IMG/VR virus record: IMGVR_UViG_3300034073_003340
Span: 371,857 to 435,856 of that record
Length of the DNA: 64,000 nt
Reading direction: 5' to 3' (one strand)
Shown here: one piece after another, positions 15,896 through 21,004 of the stretch
Layout: each line of letters begins with the position of its first letter
Position numbering within the stretch: the first letter of the stretch is position 1
Notes under the pieces: generated by a model
Seen by the model: the letters and a program-made list of their open reading frames with translations, nothing else
Told to the model about the DNA's origin: nothing
Database searches by the model: none
Position numbers and translations under genes: made by a program

Positions 15896-17629
15896 TCACT
15901 GGTCGTCAGTGTGAATCCCAGCAAGTCGCTGTAGCTCTTCCTTGTCAGTAGGGGCGAGAGGTTCGTCCTTGACCCGACGAGCATTAGACTTTGCGGGAGC
16001 CTTTGCCGCAACAGCTTCACCGACCGGAATAACCTCGGCCATGCTGCTCAGCATACCGTTCATACCCTGGCTTAGATCAAGCCCCAGTTCCTTGGCTAGC
16101 GTGTCAACTACTGGAACCTGTAGTCGATAATTCAGCAGCGCATCAGTCATCTGAGTAGGGAGATTAGGACTGCCGTTTCCCACGGTTTCTCCCTCAACAG
16201 ATCCAGATGCCTGACCGCCCATACCGCCGTTCATATGAACTACACGGAAGCTATCAATCTTCTCGATGGGCTTGCCCATCTGCTCAAGAATAGCAGGCAG
16301 CTTTTCAATGAGCTTGAGTCGAATCTGCAGGGCGGCCTGTTCGGGCGACATTGTGTTTGCCGCTTCGTTGAGGGCGCGCTGACCTTCCGACTCAACTTCA
16401 TAACGCTTGGCTTCAGCCTCGATGAGGCGTTCCTTGGCCTTGGCCGACGCATCTGCTGCTGCTAGTTCAGCTTCAGCACGAATACGAACTGCTGCCGCAT
16501 CTTCCTGCGCGCGACCCTCGGCCGCAATCACAGCCACTCGCTGGTCTCGTTCTGCCCTGGCCGTTGCCTCAACAGTCTTAACCTCTTCGCTGGCCCGAAC
16601 CGCTTCAGCCCTGGCTGCGTCTGCTGCCGCGCGAGCTTCTGATTCTTCCTGAGACTTGGCAGCGACCTTGATTCGCTGATCCTGACTTGCCAGCTCAAGA
16701 TCTCGGGCAGCTTCGGCCTGCGCAATCTTAATCTTGCGCTCACTTTCAACCCTGGCTTCTTCAGTGGCCTGCTCGGCATGAATTACAGCAAGATCAGTTT
16801 CACGCTGGCGATCAGCACGGGTTCGCGCCAGTTCAGCTTCCTGTGCTGCTCGACGGGTTTCCACTTCACGCTGCTGTTCAAGCGTAGCAAATTCATCCTG
16901 CTGGCGAATTTCCAGAGAACGCTTGTTGGCCTCAAAGTTGCGCTGCTCAATAGCAACACGATTTTCCTGCTCGATATCGTTTCGCTCTTTCTTGCGCGTT
17001 TCCGTGACCGACGTCAGCTTGGCAAGACCTTCAGCGTCGAAAGCGTTGTTGGGATTGAAGTGTTCCACAGAAGTCTGATCAAGACCAGTCAGCGACACCG
17101 ATTCAAGTTCAAGACCATTGGCCTTGAGATCCTCGGCCGCCGTGGTCTTAACCGTCTTCACGAACTCAGCCCGCTGGGTGTGGAGGTCCTGCATGTCCAT
17201 TCCAGCAGCAACCGCGCGAAGGACGTCAACGAACTTACCTTCAATAAGTTCACTGAGCTGCTGGGGGTTCATAGTCCGGCGACCCAGTGTCTGTGCTGCC
17301 GCTGCGATGCTGCCATCGTCAGGTGAAACCCGAACATAGAACTCAGCCTTGACATCAACGCGCAGACGGTCCTTGGTGATAAGCGAGTCCTTGGCCTTTC
17401 GCTCAACAGTCAGACGCAGGGTCTGCATATTGATAGGAATGGTTTCATGAAACACCGGCAGCACAATTGCGCCGCCATCCTTGACGACTTTCTGTCCGCC
17501 CATACCAGTTCGGACGAATGCTTGTTCCTTTGAGGCTCGCTGGTAGAGCCTGGTCATGAAGATGACCATTGTGAGAATAACGACGATTGCCGCTACCACA
17601 ATGCCACCAATGAATGCTAGATTTTCCAA
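15896..17629 (-). CDS. Flotillin/SPFH-domain membrane protein (YqiK-like)
   Basis: N-terminal TM; YQRASKEQAFVRTGMGG, LITKDRLRVDVKAEFYVRV and GLELESVSLT..FNPNNAFDAEGL; long Ala/Glu coiled coil; GGAG RBS with TTG start. Confidence 0.92.
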   Translation of the reverse strand: MENLAFIGGIVVAAIVVILTMVIFMTRLYQRASKEQAFVRTGMGGQKVVKDGGAIVLPVFHETIPINMQTLRLTVERKAKDSLITKDRLRVDVKAEFYVRVSPDDGSIAAAAQTLGRRTMNPQQLSELIEGKFVDVLRAVAAGMDMQDLHTQRAEFVKTVKTTAAEDLKANGLELESVSLTGLDQTSVEHFNPNNAFDAEGLAKLTSVTETRKKERNDIEQENRVAIEQRNFEANKRSLEIRQQDEFATLEQQREVETRRAAQEAELARTRADRQRETDLAVIHAEQATEEARVESERKIKIAQAEAARDLELASQDQRIKVAAKSQEESEARAAADAARAEAVRASEEVKTVEATARAERDQRVAVIAAEGRAQEDAAAVRIRAEAELAAADASAKAKERLIEAEAKRYEVESEGQRALNEAANTMSPEQAALQIRLKLIEKLPAILEQMGKPIEKIDSFRVVHMNGGMGGQASGSVEGETVGNGSPNLPTQMTDALLNYRLQVPVVDTLAKELGLDLSQGMNGMLSSMAEVIPVGEAVAAKAPAKSNARRVKDEPLAPTDKEELQRLAGIHTDDQ

Positions 17630-17642
17630 AAAATTTCTCCTG

Positions 17643-18311
17643 TTAGATCTTACGGACTATAAAGGCAATTTCACGATCCTTGTGTGGCCCTAGTAACACC
17701 ACCTGTGAACCACTAGCAATATGTTCGTTGCTTTCTGAACAGACCACAAGATTATGGTCAGTCCCAAAATTATCAGTGAATCTAGCAATACCAAAATCCA
17801 CTGGACCTATAGGTCCAGCAGTCAGTATTCCGCTTGATCCGATCAAGCTTTCAACCTTGATCGCGCTTGTTTCATCTTTTGGAAGCAACGGAGCAATGGA
17901 GGCAGACAGTGACCTGACGATTGGCAAGGTGCAGGCTAAAACCACTGGGCCTACTAGAAGTGCTGGCATCAAGCCTGAAGCTATGCCATTATAGATCCAT
18001 TGTGCGCTATATCCCAAGATACTGTAGATACCAGAGAAAAGAATAATAAAAACAGTGCTTGGAACATGGCCAGGGTTGACCCATAGAAAAATTGAAGAAT
18101 GACCAGCTTCGAGATAATCCGGGACACCATTCCCGTTAGCGTCCAGGGTAAAATCAATTTCAGCGTCTACCTGGAATAGGTCATGACCTATACCAAAGAT
18201 GATTGAAATCATTCCCAGGATGAGCAAGGCTATAACAATACAGCCGGCGATTAGAAAGGCAGTGTTTTCTGCTGCGGTGATGAAATTCAGCATGTCCATG
18301 CTGGACTTCAT
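17643..18311 (-). CDS. YqiJ-like (NfeD-type OB-fold) membrane protein, flotillin partner
   Basis: Three hydrophobic segments; PKDETSAIKVESLIGSSG and DNFGTDHNLVV; immediately upstream of flotillin as in yqiJ-yqiK. Confidence 0.75.
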   Translation of the reverse strand: MKSSMDMLNFITAAENTAFLIAGCIVIALLILGMISIIFGIGHDLFQVDAEIDFTLDANGNGVPDYLEAGHSSIFLWVNPGHVPSTVFIILFSGIYSILGYSAQWIYNGIASGLMPALLVGPVVLACTLPIVRSLSASIAPLLPKDETSAIKVESLIGSSGILTAGPIGPVDFGIARFTDNFGTDHNLVVCSESNEHIASGSQVVLLGPHKDREIAFIVRKI

Positions 18312-18322
18312 AACAAGAGGAT

Positions 18323-18745
18323 TTACCTCTTGTCAATTGAATCGCTCCTAGTCTTTGGAATAATTTTTGAATCAGCCAATTTTGCTAATATTTGGCCATG
18401 ACAGGCCTGTGGGTGACACCAGCAACCTAGACGTTTGCCCTTTAGCTCGTGAAGGGCATCCATCAAATGCGGCTGCTCAACAATCCAATCGGCATATTGT
18501 TTGATACATTCTTCACGGGTGCCATCTCTACCAACCACAAATGGATTACCCCATTTGGTCTTGCGATCAATACGGACGTCATAATGATCTTCTTTGAGAT
18601 TAACTACCGTGGTGCTGGGCGGTGGCCAAGAGAATAGATCATCTTTCATCGATCTACTTATTATAGAGGTAGGGGACCTGGGAAGAATTTGCGACCCTGA
18701 CCCAGGTCCCCAAACGGTTAGCAAAGAGGGGTTTGCCACCGCCAA
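18323..18745 (-). CDS. DUF4326-like protein
   Basis: RIDRKTKWGNPF and LKGKRLGCWCHPQACHGQIL. Confidence 0.8.
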   Translation of the reverse strand: MAVANPSLLTVWGPGSGSQILPRSPTSIISRSMKDDLFSWPPPSTTVVNLKEDHYDVRIDRKTKWGNPFVVGRDGTREECIKQYADWIVEQPHLMDALHELKGKRLGCWCHPQACHGQILAKLADSKIIPKTRSDSIDKR

Positions 18746-18846
18746 TTAAGGTTTAGCAACTAAAAATGATTGCGCAACTCTTTTTGCGACGAACTGTGTG
18801 ATTATTCACAATCAGTGAATCAAATATTATTAACAATAAAGTAACG

Positions 18847-19200
18847 TTAAAATATTGCGTTGAGATGTTTTTCTATCTCACAGACCCTATAGGGTTTAGT
18901 TAAAATGGGCCATTGCTGAAATACTGTAGGTAGCTCTTGTGAATCCATGCCACTACATACCACAACAGGAATATTGAGCGCCGCTAGCATATTGGCTGCT
19001 CCGATGCTGGACTCGTCCCTGAGACCGACATCAAGAAACACACAAGAGATTTCATCCCCTTGCTCTTTGATGATAGTTTCAGCTTCAGAGTTGGTTGTAG
19101 CAGGTCCTAAAAGAGACAGCTCGTTGTCTTCACAAATGTCTTCCCATAAGAGATGAAGCAAGATTTGATCCTCAACGAGCAGAACACGGCCTTTAGCCAT
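18847..19200 (-). CDS. Single-domain response regulator (receiver only)
   Basis: VLLVED acidic pocket, FLDV phospho-acceptor Asp, PVVVCSG and ILTKPY; AGGAG RBS. Confidence 0.88.
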   Translation of the reverse strand: MAKGRVLLVEDQILLHLLWEDICEDNELSLLGPATTNSEAETIIKEQGDEISCVFLDVGLRDESSIGAANMLAALNIPVVVCSGMDSQELPTVFQQWPILTKPYRVCEIEKHLNAIF

Positions 19201-20244: not shown

Positions 20245-20690
20245 TGCGACGATCCGAAATAGACCTGCGTATCTATCATCAGTAGAGGAAAAACGGCCCG
20301 TTCTGTTGTTACGCCGGGACCATGCGCCACCTAGGGAGTTGATCCCCTAGGGATTGTTGAGGCATAGGAATCTACCGTAGCTTTTTCCTAACCTCGCTAC
20401 CCTTAGGCAGCGAGCGCCTCGACAACATCGTTGTCGTTGACAGTTACGTCGTTGATCTTTTCAGAACAGATGTTCCCAGGGAATCACCCCTCGTCATCGC
20501 TTCACTGGTTTCCCAGATCGTCTCTCAACCGTTCGCTTCCACGTCGATCCTAGTTCAGGCCCATCAGTTACAACGCCCACAGCGTCCGTGGTCTATATCC
20601 TGTCAATTCAGGACCGCGTTGTAAGTGGTGGACCTGCCGGGTACCGCCCCCGGGTCCGCTAGTCACTAATAAGTTTCGGTCATCAATAAC
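20245..20690 (-). ncRNA. ssrA: Circularly permuted (two-piece) tmRNA
   Basis: Minus strand carries first the T-arm CCGGG-GGCGGTA-CCCGG and 3' acceptor CAGGTCC-A-CCA (20636-20626), then a 63-nt intervening segment, then the 5' acceptor GGGCCTG (20562-20556), giving a 7-bp stem with a G3-U70 Ala determinant. Tag ORF 20441-20403 reads VNDNDVVEALAA-stop. Outer ends are approximate. Confidence 0.93.
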
Positions 20691-20696
20691 TTTTTC

Positions 20697-20725
20697 AATA
20701 TAGTAGATAAGGATCCATATGTCAA
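20697..20725 (-). promoter_or_regulatory. Near-consensus sigma70 promoter of the tmRNA
   Basis: TTGACA-N17-TATATT, placing +1 at about 20690. Confidence 0.8.
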
Positions 20726-20728
20726 GCA

Positions 20729-21004
20729 TTAACCTACAAAAACATTAGGTGAACCAGTGGCTACTTTGCTCTTACACATAACCGGATCACCTTTTCGTCC
20801 CTGCTGCCGACCGTTAGTAAAAACAGTGCTAGAGCCCCTGGCTAGCTTGCTGGTGTGATCTTTATGAAAAGCCCACATATCACCTTGTCTATGCGCTGGT
20901 TTGCCATTTATAAAAACATCAGGCGAGCCTTGTAGATTTGGTCGCGGCTTTGCGTCGCCGTGCCCGGTACACTTATCACCCAAGCGAGCCGCTGGCTTAC
21001 CCAC
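20729..21004 (-). CDS. PAAR-domain spike-tip protein (T4 gp5.4-like)
   Basis: KPAARLGDKCTGH, GSPDVFINGKPAHRQGD and ATGSPNVFVG. Confidence 0.92.
   Translation of the reverse strand: MGKPAARLGDKCTGHGDAKPRPNLQGSPDVFINGKPAHRQGDMWAFHKDHTSKLARGSSTVFTNGRQQGRKGDPVMCKSKVATGSPNVFVG

What the first reader, a model, noticed from the sequence alone, without database searches (positions are those of the whole stretch)
20245..20725. Phage-encoded circularly permuted tmRNA with a non-host-like tag
The sequence shows the alphaproteobacterial permuted order, the GGCRGUA-type T-loop, G3-U70, an encoded CCA, a second inter-piece pairing (GATGACCGAA 20684-20675 with TTCGGATCGTC 20258-20248) and a near-perfect sigma70 promoter. 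The tag (A)VNDNDVVEALAA keeps NDN and the ClpX-type LAA end but resumes on Val (GTC) rather than the usual Ala. I infer it could change adaptor (SspB) recognition or degradation rate of tagged proteins. It is also the best host-range clue in the window.
Basis: partly seen in the sequence, partly recalled or inferred. Interest (0 to 1): 0.7.

Follow-up and report, generated by a model that had tools for sequence, protein, structure and literature searches.

The report
Two-piece tmRNA gene in a megaphage
A 436-kb bacteriophage carries its own complete, split ("two-piece") ribosome-rescue RNA that adds a degradation tag beginning with valine; such phage genes are already known, but this one belongs to a phage-borne lineage that standard software often misses and sits in a genome that also encodes the ClpXP protease that destroys tagged proteins.

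Summary
Rfam scores a circularly permuted, alphaproteobacterial-type tmRNA on the minus strand above both curated thresholds. Ten phage relatives confirm the acceptor stem (G3-U70 invariant), T-arm, P2, PK1 and a 3' pseudoknot by compensatory changes. The tag (A)VNDNDVVEALAA and the promoter are correct.

Two details fail:
- The gene ends at about 20295, not 20245.
- The proposed "second inter-piece pairing" lies outside the conserved gene, is no better than 8.7% of shuffles, and is not conserved.

The window is the end of a complete 436-kb phage genome. Its cultured relatives are Sinorhizobium phage Phosso and Agrobacterium phage Atu_ph07, and Phosso has the same gene order (289-aa gene, PAAR, tmRNA).

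Phage two-piece tmRNAs are already documented, and a Val resume codon has precedent, so this is a new member of a known kind. What is added here:
- GUC(Val)-resume tags recur in many viral-contig tmRNAs, several of them inside phage structural modules.
- The gene is a mosaic of exchanged modules.
- ARAGORN finds only 4 of 11 relatives, and three GenBank phage records leave the gene unannotated.
- The genome lacks SmpB but encodes an intact-looking ClpX, two ClpP-family proteins and amber-suppressor tRNAs.

Function and processing are inferred, not shown.

The parts
20697..20725 (-). Sigma-70-type promoter: -35 TTGACA 20725-20720, 17-nt spacer, -10 TATATT 20702-20697. The predicted start of transcription is near 20690.
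   Evidence: 11 of 12 consensus positions; coordinates; TTGAC is invariant in five relatives. The start site is inferred.
20626..20690 (-). Acceptor piece, about 65 nt: 5' tail plus P2 3' strand 20690-20657, T-arm 20653-20637 (loop GGCGGUA), acceptor 3' strand 20636-20630, discriminator A 20629, encoded CCA 20628-20626.
   Evidence: Rfam alignments; covariation in the T-stem, P2 and acceptor stem; coordinates.
20563..20625 (-). Intervening spacer of 63 nt, predicted to be excised. Its two ends pair (UUACAACGC with GCGUUGUAA), which leaves a conserved UGAU leader just before G1.
   Evidence: the spacer sequence is only 30-38% identical between relatives, yet its ends pair in 8 of 10. TGA just before GGG is invariant and the adjoining T nearly so. 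Excision is inferred.
20295..20562 (-). Coding piece, about 268 nt: acceptor 5' strand GGGCCUG 20562-20556, GGAUCGAC 20550-20543, P2 5' strand, PK1 (about 20491-20453), tag ORF, stop-loop hairpin 20414-20393, hairpin with AUCAAC loop 20351-20330, and terminal pseudoknot PK2 20327-20295.
   Evidence: Paired cells: PK1 stem 2, 47 of 50; PK2 helix X, 38 of 40, with 3 of 4 pairs compensatory; 3' hairpin compensatory at 3 pairs.
20403..20441 (-). Tag reading frame: resume codon GUC (Val) 20441-20439, then N D N D V V E A L A A, stop UAA 20405-20403. Codons 2 to 8 can form a 7-bp hairpin (20436-20420) whose stem is nearly invariant (only C-G to U-G at the closing pair) and whose loop codon varies.
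   Evidence: The final Ala-Ala codons differ synonymously among relatives.
20287..20294 (-). G followed by a U-run (UUUUU at 20293-20289), directly after the last stem of PK2. This is the probable transcript end.
   Evidence: Sequence. U-runs follow PK2 in 6 of 10 relatives. Inferred.
20729..21004 (-). PAAR-motif protein gene immediately upstream. The gene order (289-aa gene, PAAR, tmRNA) is shared with Sinorhizobium phage Phosso.
20248..20258 (-). It is NOT part of the gene: it lies in unconserved sequence downstream of the terminal pseudoknot.

Best explanation
This is a genuine, expressed two-piece (circularly permuted) tmRNA gene carried by a lytic-type megaphage.

Proposed mechanism (inferred unless marked otherwise):
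1. One transcript runs from the sigma-70-type promoter (start near 20690) to the U-run after the terminal pseudoknot (about 20295-20289).
2. It folds so that the acceptor stem closes over a structured 63-nt spacer.
3. Host RNase P cuts before G20562, and host 3'-end enzymes trim back to the encoded CCA at 20626. This releases an acceptor piece of about 65 nt and a coding piece of about 268 nt, held together by the acceptor stem and P2.
4. Host AlaRS charges it with alanine (G3-U70 and A73 are present).
5. Host SmpB and EF-Tu deliver it to ribosomes stalled on broken or stop-less mRNAs.
6. Translation resumes at GUC and appends (A)VNDNDVVEALAA.
7. The ...LAA end directs the product to ClpXP, which the phage itself also encodes.

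Net effect: more ribosome-rescue and clean-up capacity during infection of a cell whose mRNAs are being degraded. The phage's own amber-suppressor tRNAs would also increase read-through to mRNA 3' ends, adding to the demand.

What is shown: the gene's identity, its structure and its conservation. What is inferred: processing, charging, tagging and the physiological role.
For: - Identity: Rfam hits exceed both curated cut-offs, and there is a single copy in the genome.
- Structure: 17 of 50 predicted pairs show compensatory changes. G3-U70 is invariant in 10 of 10 relatives while three neighbouring acceptor-stem pairs (positions 4-6) co-vary. PK1 stem 2 and PK2 are supported, matching the canonical PK1-tag-PK2 layout of two-piece tmRNA (PMC3985003).
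- The tag is selected as a peptide: every relative ends in [L/I/M]AA, while the last two Ala codons vary synonymously.
- The promoter -35 is conserved. The spacer keeps its closed-stem shape although its sequence turns over.
- Phage origin: complete genome with terminal repeats, 59 tRNAs and no integrase. The same locus order occurs in cultured phage Phosso, and the related phage AP-J-162 is reported to carry a tmRNA (PMC11242549).
- Partners: the genome has no SmpB, AlaRS or SspB. It does have a ClpX with zinc finger, GYVG, RKH and IGF motifs intact, and a ClpP with Ser/His/Asp. The same set is present in the 462-kb and 465-kb relatives.
- Suppressor tRNAs: tRNA(CUA) genes occur in all four tmRNA-bearing genomes checked. 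Suppressor read-through is a known source of tmRNA substrates (Ueda 2002, cited in PMC3985003).
- RNA: short contigs from RNA libraries, 94-98% identical, cover only 20295-20549.
Against: - There is no direct evidence for processing, alanylation or tagging.
- The RNA-library contigs come from relatives, some of those libraries clearly contain DNA, and one record extends past 20295.
- In S. meliloti a Val resume codon gave only weak tagging (bioRxiv 10.1101/2022.11.12.516264), so this tmRNA may tag inefficiently.
- Without its own SmpB, the RNA depends on compatibility with an unknown host's SmpB.
- Atu_ph07 has ClpX and a tRNA(UCA) but no tmRNA. Neither ClpX nor a suppressor tRNA therefore requires a phage tmRNA, and the co-occurrences could reflect shared ancestry alone.
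- PK1 stem 1 and the stop-loop hairpin are poorly supported in the alignment.
Confidence: 0.7

Rival explanations
1. The tag is tuned to the phage's own ClpXP. In this view the phage tmRNA, the phage ClpX/ClpP and the amber-suppressor tRNAs form one semi-autonomous module. The Val-resume/VV tag would distinguish phage-tagged substrates from host-tagged ones, for example by weakening host SspB delivery while keeping recognition by ClpX.
For: tmRNA, ClpX and two ClpP genes occur together in all three complete megaphage genomes and in Phosso. The related Erythrobacter phages place the tmRNA next to an HslV-type peptidase gene. The phage ClpX keeps the RKH and pore loops. The resume-codon residue is position 2 of the tag, which is part of the E. 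coli SspB binding determinant (my own knowledge, Flynn et al. 2001).
Against: The genes are not linked: ClpX lies 29 kb from the tmRNA and ClpP about 287 kb away. Atu_ph07 has ClpX without a tmRNA. L109, L126 and Phosso use an Ala resume codon with the same or a related ClpXP set. Nothing here tests binding specificity. Published work attributes phage ClpX to replication control or virion assembly (PMC11242549, PMC7824862).
Confidence: 0.15
2. Decoy or inhibitor: the RNA competes for host SmpB, EF-Tu or ribosomes and dampens host trans-translation rather than rescuing ribosomes productively, as reported for the CDS-less tmRNA of mycobacteriophage DS6A.
For: There is no phage SmpB. A Val resume codon performed poorly in S. 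meliloti (bioRxiv 10.1101/2022.11.12.516264). A precedent for an inhibitory phage tmRNA is cited in PMC11915505.
Against: The gene has an intact PK1, resume context and tag ORF. The peptide end is conserved while its codons vary synonymously. A decoy would not need a conserved degradation tag.
Confidence: 0.08
3. Non-functional passenger: a decaying captured host gene, or the remnant of an attachment site for integration into ssrA.
For: tmRNA genes are frequent integration sites, and fragments of them occur in prophages (PMC9004378, PMC4383910). Relative L125 carries a displaced duplicate of the gene's 3' end.
Against: The gene is complete, with its own conserved promoter. Covariation across ten relatives is extensive. 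The genome has no integrase. The locus is syntenic with Phosso. No bacterial species representative carries the same 3' block or the same acceptor arm.
Confidence: 0.03

Closest known systems
Alphaproteobacterial two-piece tmRNA (Caulobacter crescentus ssrA; Rfam RF01849 / RF04321)
   Same: Permuted gene order; GGCGGUA T-loop; G3-U70; encoded CCA; P2 joining the two pieces; PK1, then the tag, then PK2; a tag starting x-N-D-N and ending LAA; UAA-N2 before the resume codon (PMC3985003).
   Different: It is carried by a phage with no SmpB. The resume codon is GUC (Val), not GCA. The hairpin with the AUCAAC loop plus the PK2 sequence block has no exact match to the signature pattern tested in any of 185,579 bacterial species representatives. 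The window and L009 also have extra hairpins inserted around PK1.
Phage-encoded two-piece tmRNAs (OM43 phage Melnitz, pelagimyophages; 53 unique forms in a survey of 18,146 phage genomes, PMC9004378)
   Same: A permuted alpha-type ssrA in a lytic myovirus-like phage, placed after an early-type promoter and proposed to recycle stalled ribosomes and amino acids.
   Different: No glutamine-riboswitch-like 3' domain was detected (Rfam scan at gathering thresholds). The source is subsurface, with relatives in soil and wastewater, rather than marine. The genome is about ten times larger and has its own ClpXP.
tmRNA of the Sinorhizobium jumbo phages AP-J-162 (reported, PMC11242549) and Phosso (found here, unannotated)
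   Same: Same phage group: genomes of about 470 kb and about 47% GC (G+C reported for AP-J-162, PMC11242549; not computed for Phosso), many tRNAs, ClpX, and tRNA(CUA). The gene order (289-aa gene, PAAR, tmRNA) is shared.
   Different: Phosso resumes on GCA, has the tag ANDNVSTKVALAA, a spacer of about 400 nt and a separate canonical terminator. Its sequence is too diverged for blastn to detect. By sequence, the window's tmRNA is nearer to those of the 150-kb Erythrobacter siphophages, which implies transfer between phages.
Helicobacter pylori SsrA (GUA Val resume codon)
   Same: A natural Val resume codon. In E. coli, GUA and GUC replacements are functional (PMC2862035).
   Different: It is a one-piece bacterial tmRNA with an unrelated tag that ends in KAA.

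Membership tests
Two-piece (permuted) tmRNA, alphaproteobacterial type | Scores above the curated covariance-model thresholds | tested here: met
   RF04321 89.3 bits (cut-off 47); RF01849 76.6 bits (cut-off 50).
Two-piece (permuted) tmRNA, alphaproteobacterial type | Permuted order: acceptor (3') piece ending in CCA lies upstream of the coding (5') piece, separated by a spacer | tested here: met
   CCA at 20628-20626, spacer 20625-20563, G1 at 20562.
Two-piece (permuted) tmRNA, alphaproteobacterial type | tRNA-Ala-like domain: 7-bp acceptor stem with G3-U70, discriminator A, and a T-arm | tested here: met
   G-U is invariant in 10 of 10 relatives. Three acceptor pairs and one T-stem pair show compensatory changes.
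Two-piece (permuted) tmRNA, alphaproteobacterial type | The two pieces are joined by helix P2 | tested here: met
   All three pairs of P2a are compensatory in 3 to 5 sequences each, and P2b is also supported.
Two-piece (permuted) tmRNA, alphaproteobacterial type | PK1 upstream and PK2 downstream of the tag frame | tested here: met
   PK1 stem 2: 47 of 50 cells paired, 2 compensatory pairs. PK2 helix X: 38 of 40 cells paired, 3 of 4 pairs compensatory. Helix Y: 50 of 60 cells paired. PK1 stem 1 is weak.
Two-piece (permuted) tmRNA, alphaproteobacterial type | Tag frame with a resume codon (usually GCN Ala), NDN, and a hydrophobic ...AA end | tested here: met
   The frame and the LAA end are present. 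The resume codon is GUC (Val), a known natural variant (PMC2862035).
Two-piece (permuted) tmRNA, alphaproteobacterial type | Processing into two RNAs, charging with alanine, and SmpB-dependent tagging | not testable with these tools
   Only weak indirect support: contigs of relatives from RNA libraries are confined to the coding piece, and a second set is ambiguous.
Phage-encoded (not host or provirus-junction) tmRNA | Lies inside a complete phage genome between phage genes, is not at an integration junction, and is conserved in related phages | tested here: met
   436-kb record with terminal repeats; PAAR gene upstream; no integrase; present in the 462-kb and 465-kb relatives and in Phosso.
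ClpXP degradation machinery (phage copy) | ClpX with zinc finger, Walker A/B, GYVG, RKH and IGF loops; ClpP with the Ser-His-Asp triad | tested here: met
   Activity and tag specificity were not tested.
   8.7% of shuffles do as well, relatives are inconsistent, and the partner lies beyond the conserved end of the gene.

The most novel reading that the evidence does not exclude
A phage-restricted lineage of alpha-type two-piece tmRNAs exists. It would be marked by a GUC (Val) resume codon and a conserved NDN/VV hairpin in the tag frame, and it would move between unrelated phages as exchangeable modules. In megaphages it would work together with phage-encoded ClpXP and amber-suppressor tRNAs as an integrated system, managing read-through and non-stop translation and routing the products to a phage-controlled protease.
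Probability: 0.15. Interest if true: 0.7.

Novelty: new member of a known kind. Interest (0 to 1): 0.38.

Why it matters
Three points, in order of practical weight.

1. Annotation. ARAGORN at default settings, the tool used in most phage annotation pipelines, finds only 4 of 11 members of this subfamily, and three GenBank phage genomes leave the gene unannotated. Counts of phage tmRNAs are therefore underestimates. Rfam RF04321 recovers them.

2. Biology. This megaphage group carries the tagging RNA, the protease that reads the tag and suppressor tRNAs, but not SmpB. That gives a concrete, testable picture of how very large phages take over host translation quality control. A cultured relative (Phosso on S. 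meliloti) exists in which to test it.

3. The Val resume codon. Its recurrence in phage-borne copies, against weak performance of Val in one host experiment, raises a testable question about tagging efficiency versus ribosome release.

None of this changes what is known about how tmRNA works.

Tried and rejected
- ARAGORN found no tmRNA at default settings. At relaxed thresholds it gave mostly spurious calls.
- Two scans of bacterial genomes were run to find the source lineage or host. The 3'-block signature gave 0 hits. The acceptor 23-mer gave one hit, a 3.9-kb contig in a Flavobacteriales MAG that shares only 37 nt and has no Rfam tmRNA call.
- The supplements of the tmRNA database paper hold no tag lists. 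PMC16621 is not held. The S. meliloti tag I recalled from memory was not found in the library, so I do not use it.
- RNA evidence consisted of assembled contigs from relatives only. Several 'RNA?' libraries contain DNA-like long contigs, so processing could not be shown.
- No HslV gene sits next to the tmRNA here, unlike in the Erythrobacter phages. The downstream 174-aa ORF has no Pfam match.
- Genome-wide TAG recoding was rejected. Coding density is already 82% under the standard code, and 47 of 416 long frames end in TAG.
- A strict link between suppressor tRNAs and tmRNA was rejected, because Atu_ph07 has a tRNA(UCA) but no tmRNA.
- tRNA-array proximity and position in the locus did not separate Val-resume from Ala-resume loci.
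- The 771-aa window protein chosen for kinship turned out to be ribonucleotide reductase, which is uninformative.

Full report
**1. What is at the locus**

Rfam places a circularly permuted tmRNA on the minus strand: tmRNA_permuted at 20684..20403 (89.3 bits, cut-off 47) and alpha_tmRNA at 20729..20364 (76.6 bits, cut-off 50). Element coordinates were fixed by script:
- -35 TTGACA 20725-20720 and -10 TATATT 20702-20697 (11 of 12 consensus positions);
- acceptor piece about 20690-20626, made of the 5' tail and P2 strand, the T-arm 20653-20637 with loop GGCGGUA, the acceptor 3' strand 20636-20630, A 20629 and CCA 20628-20626;
- spacer 20625-20563;
- coding piece from G20562, with acceptor strand GGGCCUG, so that G20560 pairs with U20632 (G3-U70);
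- resume codon GUC 20441-20439;
- tag VNDNDVVEALAA, stop UAA 20405-20403.

It does call exactly this tag in relative L124, whose tag and 3' domain are 147 of 147 identical to the window.

**2. Where the window comes from**

The window is the last 64 kb of a 435,856-bp IMG/VR virus record with direct terminal repeats, rated 100% complete. The genome is 46.3% G+C and has 59 tRNA genes. It has one tmRNA and no tyrosine integrase. The source sample appears to be a subsurface metagenome, and partial matches occur in wastewater, groundwater, soil and marine runs.

**3. Relatives and structure**

Pattern scans of IMG/VR and a phage-database search recovered close relatives:
- in two further complete megaphage genomes of 462 and 465 kb, and in several fragments;
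- in two cultured 150-kb Erythrobacter phages, where the gene is unannotated.

In a ten-sequence alignment, RNAalifold predicts 50 pairs, 17 of them with compensatory changes:
- the acceptor stem, with its G-U invariant and three neighbouring pairs (positions 4-6) co-varying;
- the T-stem;
- P2a, where every pair is compensated;
- P2b, PK1 stem 2 and a 3' hairpin with an invariant AUCAAC loop.

With corrected coordinates, two further helices form an H-type pseudoknot at 20327-20295. Helix X has 38 of 40 cells paired, with 3 of 4 pairs compensatory. Helix Y has 50 of 60 cells paired. This is the PK1-tag-PK2 layout described for two-piece tmRNA (PMC3985003).

The spacer is only 30-38% identical between relatives. 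Even so, its two ends pair in 8 of 10, leaving a conserved UGAU before G1 (TGA invariant, T nearly so). That is the shape expected of an RNase P substrate.

All relatives' tags end in [L/I/M]AA, while the last two Ala codons vary synonymously. This indicates selection on the translated peptide.

**4. What is wrong in the finding**

Conservation stops at about 20295, the end of PK2, followed by a U-run at 20293-20289. The proposed partner at 20258-20248 lies beyond that point.

The best duplex between the 5' tail and the 150 nt downstream is -15.6 kcal/mol. Dinucleotide shuffles give -12.2 +/- 2.2, and 8.7% of them do as well. The same test in nine relatives gives fractions from 0.017 to 0.96 with no shared position.

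The known architecture joins the two pieces only through the tRNA-like domain (PMC3985003). The gene therefore spans about 20725-20289 including its promoter, not 20245-20725.

**5. Expression evidence**

In the first set of RNA libraries, short contigs 94-98% identical to the window cover only 20295-20549, inside the coding piece. In the second set, one record runs past 20295 to 20242, another touches the spacer's edge at 20567, and one 1.6-kb contig also matches 20732-20777 upstream of the promoter. No record bridges the spacer.

These contigs come from relatives. Several of the libraries hold DNA-like long contigs. I therefore treat this as weak support for expression and as no proof of processing.

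**6. Partners**

The genome lacks SmpB, AlaRS, SspB and HslV. It does encode the following, all outside the window:
- a 417-aa ClpX with zinc finger, Walker motifs and GYVG, RKH and IGF loops, scoring 508 bits against E. coli ClpX;
- a 206-aa ClpP with its Ser/His/Asp triad;
- a second ClpP-like protein;
- a 755-aa ClpA/C-like protein.

The 462-kb and 465-kb relatives have the same tmRNA, ClpX and two-ClpP set, and also lack SmpB. The phage ClpX belongs to a large lineage of 65-92% identical proteins on contigs up to about 430-570 kb.

Phage ClpX and ClpP have been noted before, but not in connection with tmRNA (PMC7824862, PMC11242549).

**7. Kinship and host**

The nearest cultured ClpX is in Sinorhizobium phage Phosso (469 kb, 63% identity), followed by Agrobacterium phage Atu_ph07 (54%).

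The 289-aa gene upstream of PAAR has homologues in only those phages among 50,697 records. In Phosso the order is the same: that gene, PAAR, one small ORF, then an unannotated alpha-type tmRNA scoring 108 bits. The Phosso tmRNA has G3-U70, a GCA resume codon, the tag ANDNVSTKVALAA and a spacer of about 400 nt. Atu_ph07 has no tmRNA.

The published Sinorhizobium phage AP-J-162 (471.5 kb, 47.1% G+C, 66 tRNAs, one tmRNA, ClpX) fits the same group (PMC11242549).

An alphaproteobacterial host, possibly in the Rhizobiales, is therefore the best inference. It rests more on these proteins than on the tmRNA type. Melnitz shows that an alpha-type tmRNA can sit in a phage of another class (PMC9004378).

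No bacterial species representative has the 3' block or the acceptor arm, so the gene is not a recent capture from a sequenced species.

**8. The Val resume codon**

Seven of the ten aligned relatives resume on GUC and three on GCA.

L009 and L126 are 100% identical except in the PK1/resume module, where one has GUC and the other GCA. The window and L124 share an identical tag and 3' domain but differ by 25-67% in the 5' modules. The gene is therefore a mosaic of exchanged modules.

Across the fetched viral loci I found 18 distinct GUC-resume VNDN... tags. That sample was enriched by my search pattern. Several of these loci sit inside phage structural modules, next to portal, capsid or baseplate genes.

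Among loci selected only on the T-arm, Val is rare.

Precedents:
- H. pylori resumes on GUA, and GUA or GUC works in E. coli (PMC2862035).
- In S. meliloti, an Ala-to-Val change of the resume codon left only weak tagging (bioRxiv 10.1101/2022.11.12.516264).

I could not test whether bacteria carry GUC-resume alpha-type tmRNAs.

Codons 2 to 8 can form a 7-bp hairpin (-6.8 kcal/mol). Its stem is nearly invariant (only C-G to U-G at the closing pair) and its loop codon varies. The 'VV' of the tag may therefore be an RNA-level constraint.

**9. Suppressor tRNAs**

The genome has two tRNA(CUA) genes. Homologues with the same anticodon occur in both megaphage relatives and twice in Phosso. The nearest Atu_ph07 homologue is tRNA-Trp(CCA).

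TAG is still a stop codon: 47 of 416 long frames end in it, and coding density is 82% under the standard code.

Read-through caused by suppressor tRNAs is a known source of tmRNA substrates (Ueda 2002, cited in PMC3985003), so the phage's own suppressors could create demand for its tmRNA. However, Atu_ph07 has a tRNA(UCA) and no tmRNA. The pattern could also reflect shared ancestry.

**10. Verdict**

This is a real, well-formed, phage-borne two-piece tmRNA, most likely functional with host SmpB. Phage two-piece tmRNAs are already documented: 53 unique forms in PMC9004378, huge-phage tmRNAs in PMC7162821, and 79 phage entries in PMC11915505. I therefore rate it a new member of a known kind and of moderate interest.

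The points worth carrying forward are:
- the ARAGORN blind spot (4 of 11 found) and the unannotated GenBank copies;
- the recurrent Val-resume phage lineage and its modular exchange;
- the co-carriage of ClpXP and suppressor tRNAs without SmpB.

Noticed in passing
G000:C1:99130-99204 and 293258-293333 (outside the window; loci L249, L250): Two tRNA genes with the amber-reading anticodon CUA. Homologues with the same anticodon occur in the 462-kb and 465-kb relatives and twice in Sinorhizobium phage Phosso. The nearest Atu_ph07 homologue is tRNA-Trp(CCA). TAG is still used as a stop codon (47 of 416 long frames), so there is no genome-wide recoding.
   Followed up: partly
G000:C1:362544-363797 (L239:1165-2418, minus strand); L236:1492-2112; L237:1471-2103; L238:1165-3432: The phage encodes ClpX (all functional motifs kept), ClpP, a second ClpP-like protein and a ClpA/C-like double AAA+ protein. 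The ClpX lineage is shared by dozens of uncultured contigs whose longest sizes are about 430-570 kb.
   Followed up: partly
L236:164-1429 (minus strand), next to ClpP: A T4 Rnl1-type RNA ligase (PF09511, 99.8 bits). Together with the 59 tRNAs, this suggests tRNA repair against host anticodon nucleases.
   Followed up: no
L125:3375-3249 (465-kb relative): About 1.35 kb downstream of the complete tmRNA there is a second, displaced copy of only the gene's 3' end, from the end of the tag through PK2. It is of the window type rather than the local type. It looks like the scar of an insertion or a module replacement at the tmRNA 3' end.
   Followed up: partly
PV764938.1 349553-350242 (L248); OL955261.1 about 75730-76150 (L002); PV416404.1 about 149860-150260 (L003): Complete permuted tmRNA genes are unannotated in three GenBank phage genomes (Phosso, vB_EliS-L02, XM05). 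In XM05 a 'hypothetical protein' CDS (XM05_242) is drawn across the gene on the opposite strand.
   Followed up: yes
L002:2129-2578 and L003:2054-2500: In both Erythrobacter phages the tmRNA ends a tRNA array and lies a few hundred bases upstream of an HslV/proteasome-type peptidase gene. This is another pairing of a phage tmRNA with a phage protease.
   Followed up: no
window 15896-18311 (minus strand): A flotillin/SPFH protein (577 aa; Flot and Band_7 domains) followed by a YqiJ/NfeD-like membrane protein (222 aa). This membrane-scaffold gene pair is unusual in a phage.
   Followed up: no
window 18323-19200 (minus strand): A DUF4326 protein (140 aa, 98 bits) and a small protein with a weak response-regulator receiver match (117 aa, below the Pfam cut-off), between the tmRNA and the flotillin pair.
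   Followed up: no
MF403008.1 430713-430787 (Atu_ph07): ARAGORN calls a 75-nt tRNA with anticodon UCA (opal-reading) in Atu_ph07, which has neither a tRNA(CUA) nor a tmRNA.
   Followed up: no
L235 (JADZGG010000368.1, 3.9-kb contig binned as a Flavobacteriales MAG), 1408-1444: The only hit in the bacterial collection to the window's acceptor-arm 23-mer. Only 37 nt are similar and Rfam makes no tmRNA call. It may be a mis-binned fragment or an unrelated tRNA-like element.
   Followed up: partly
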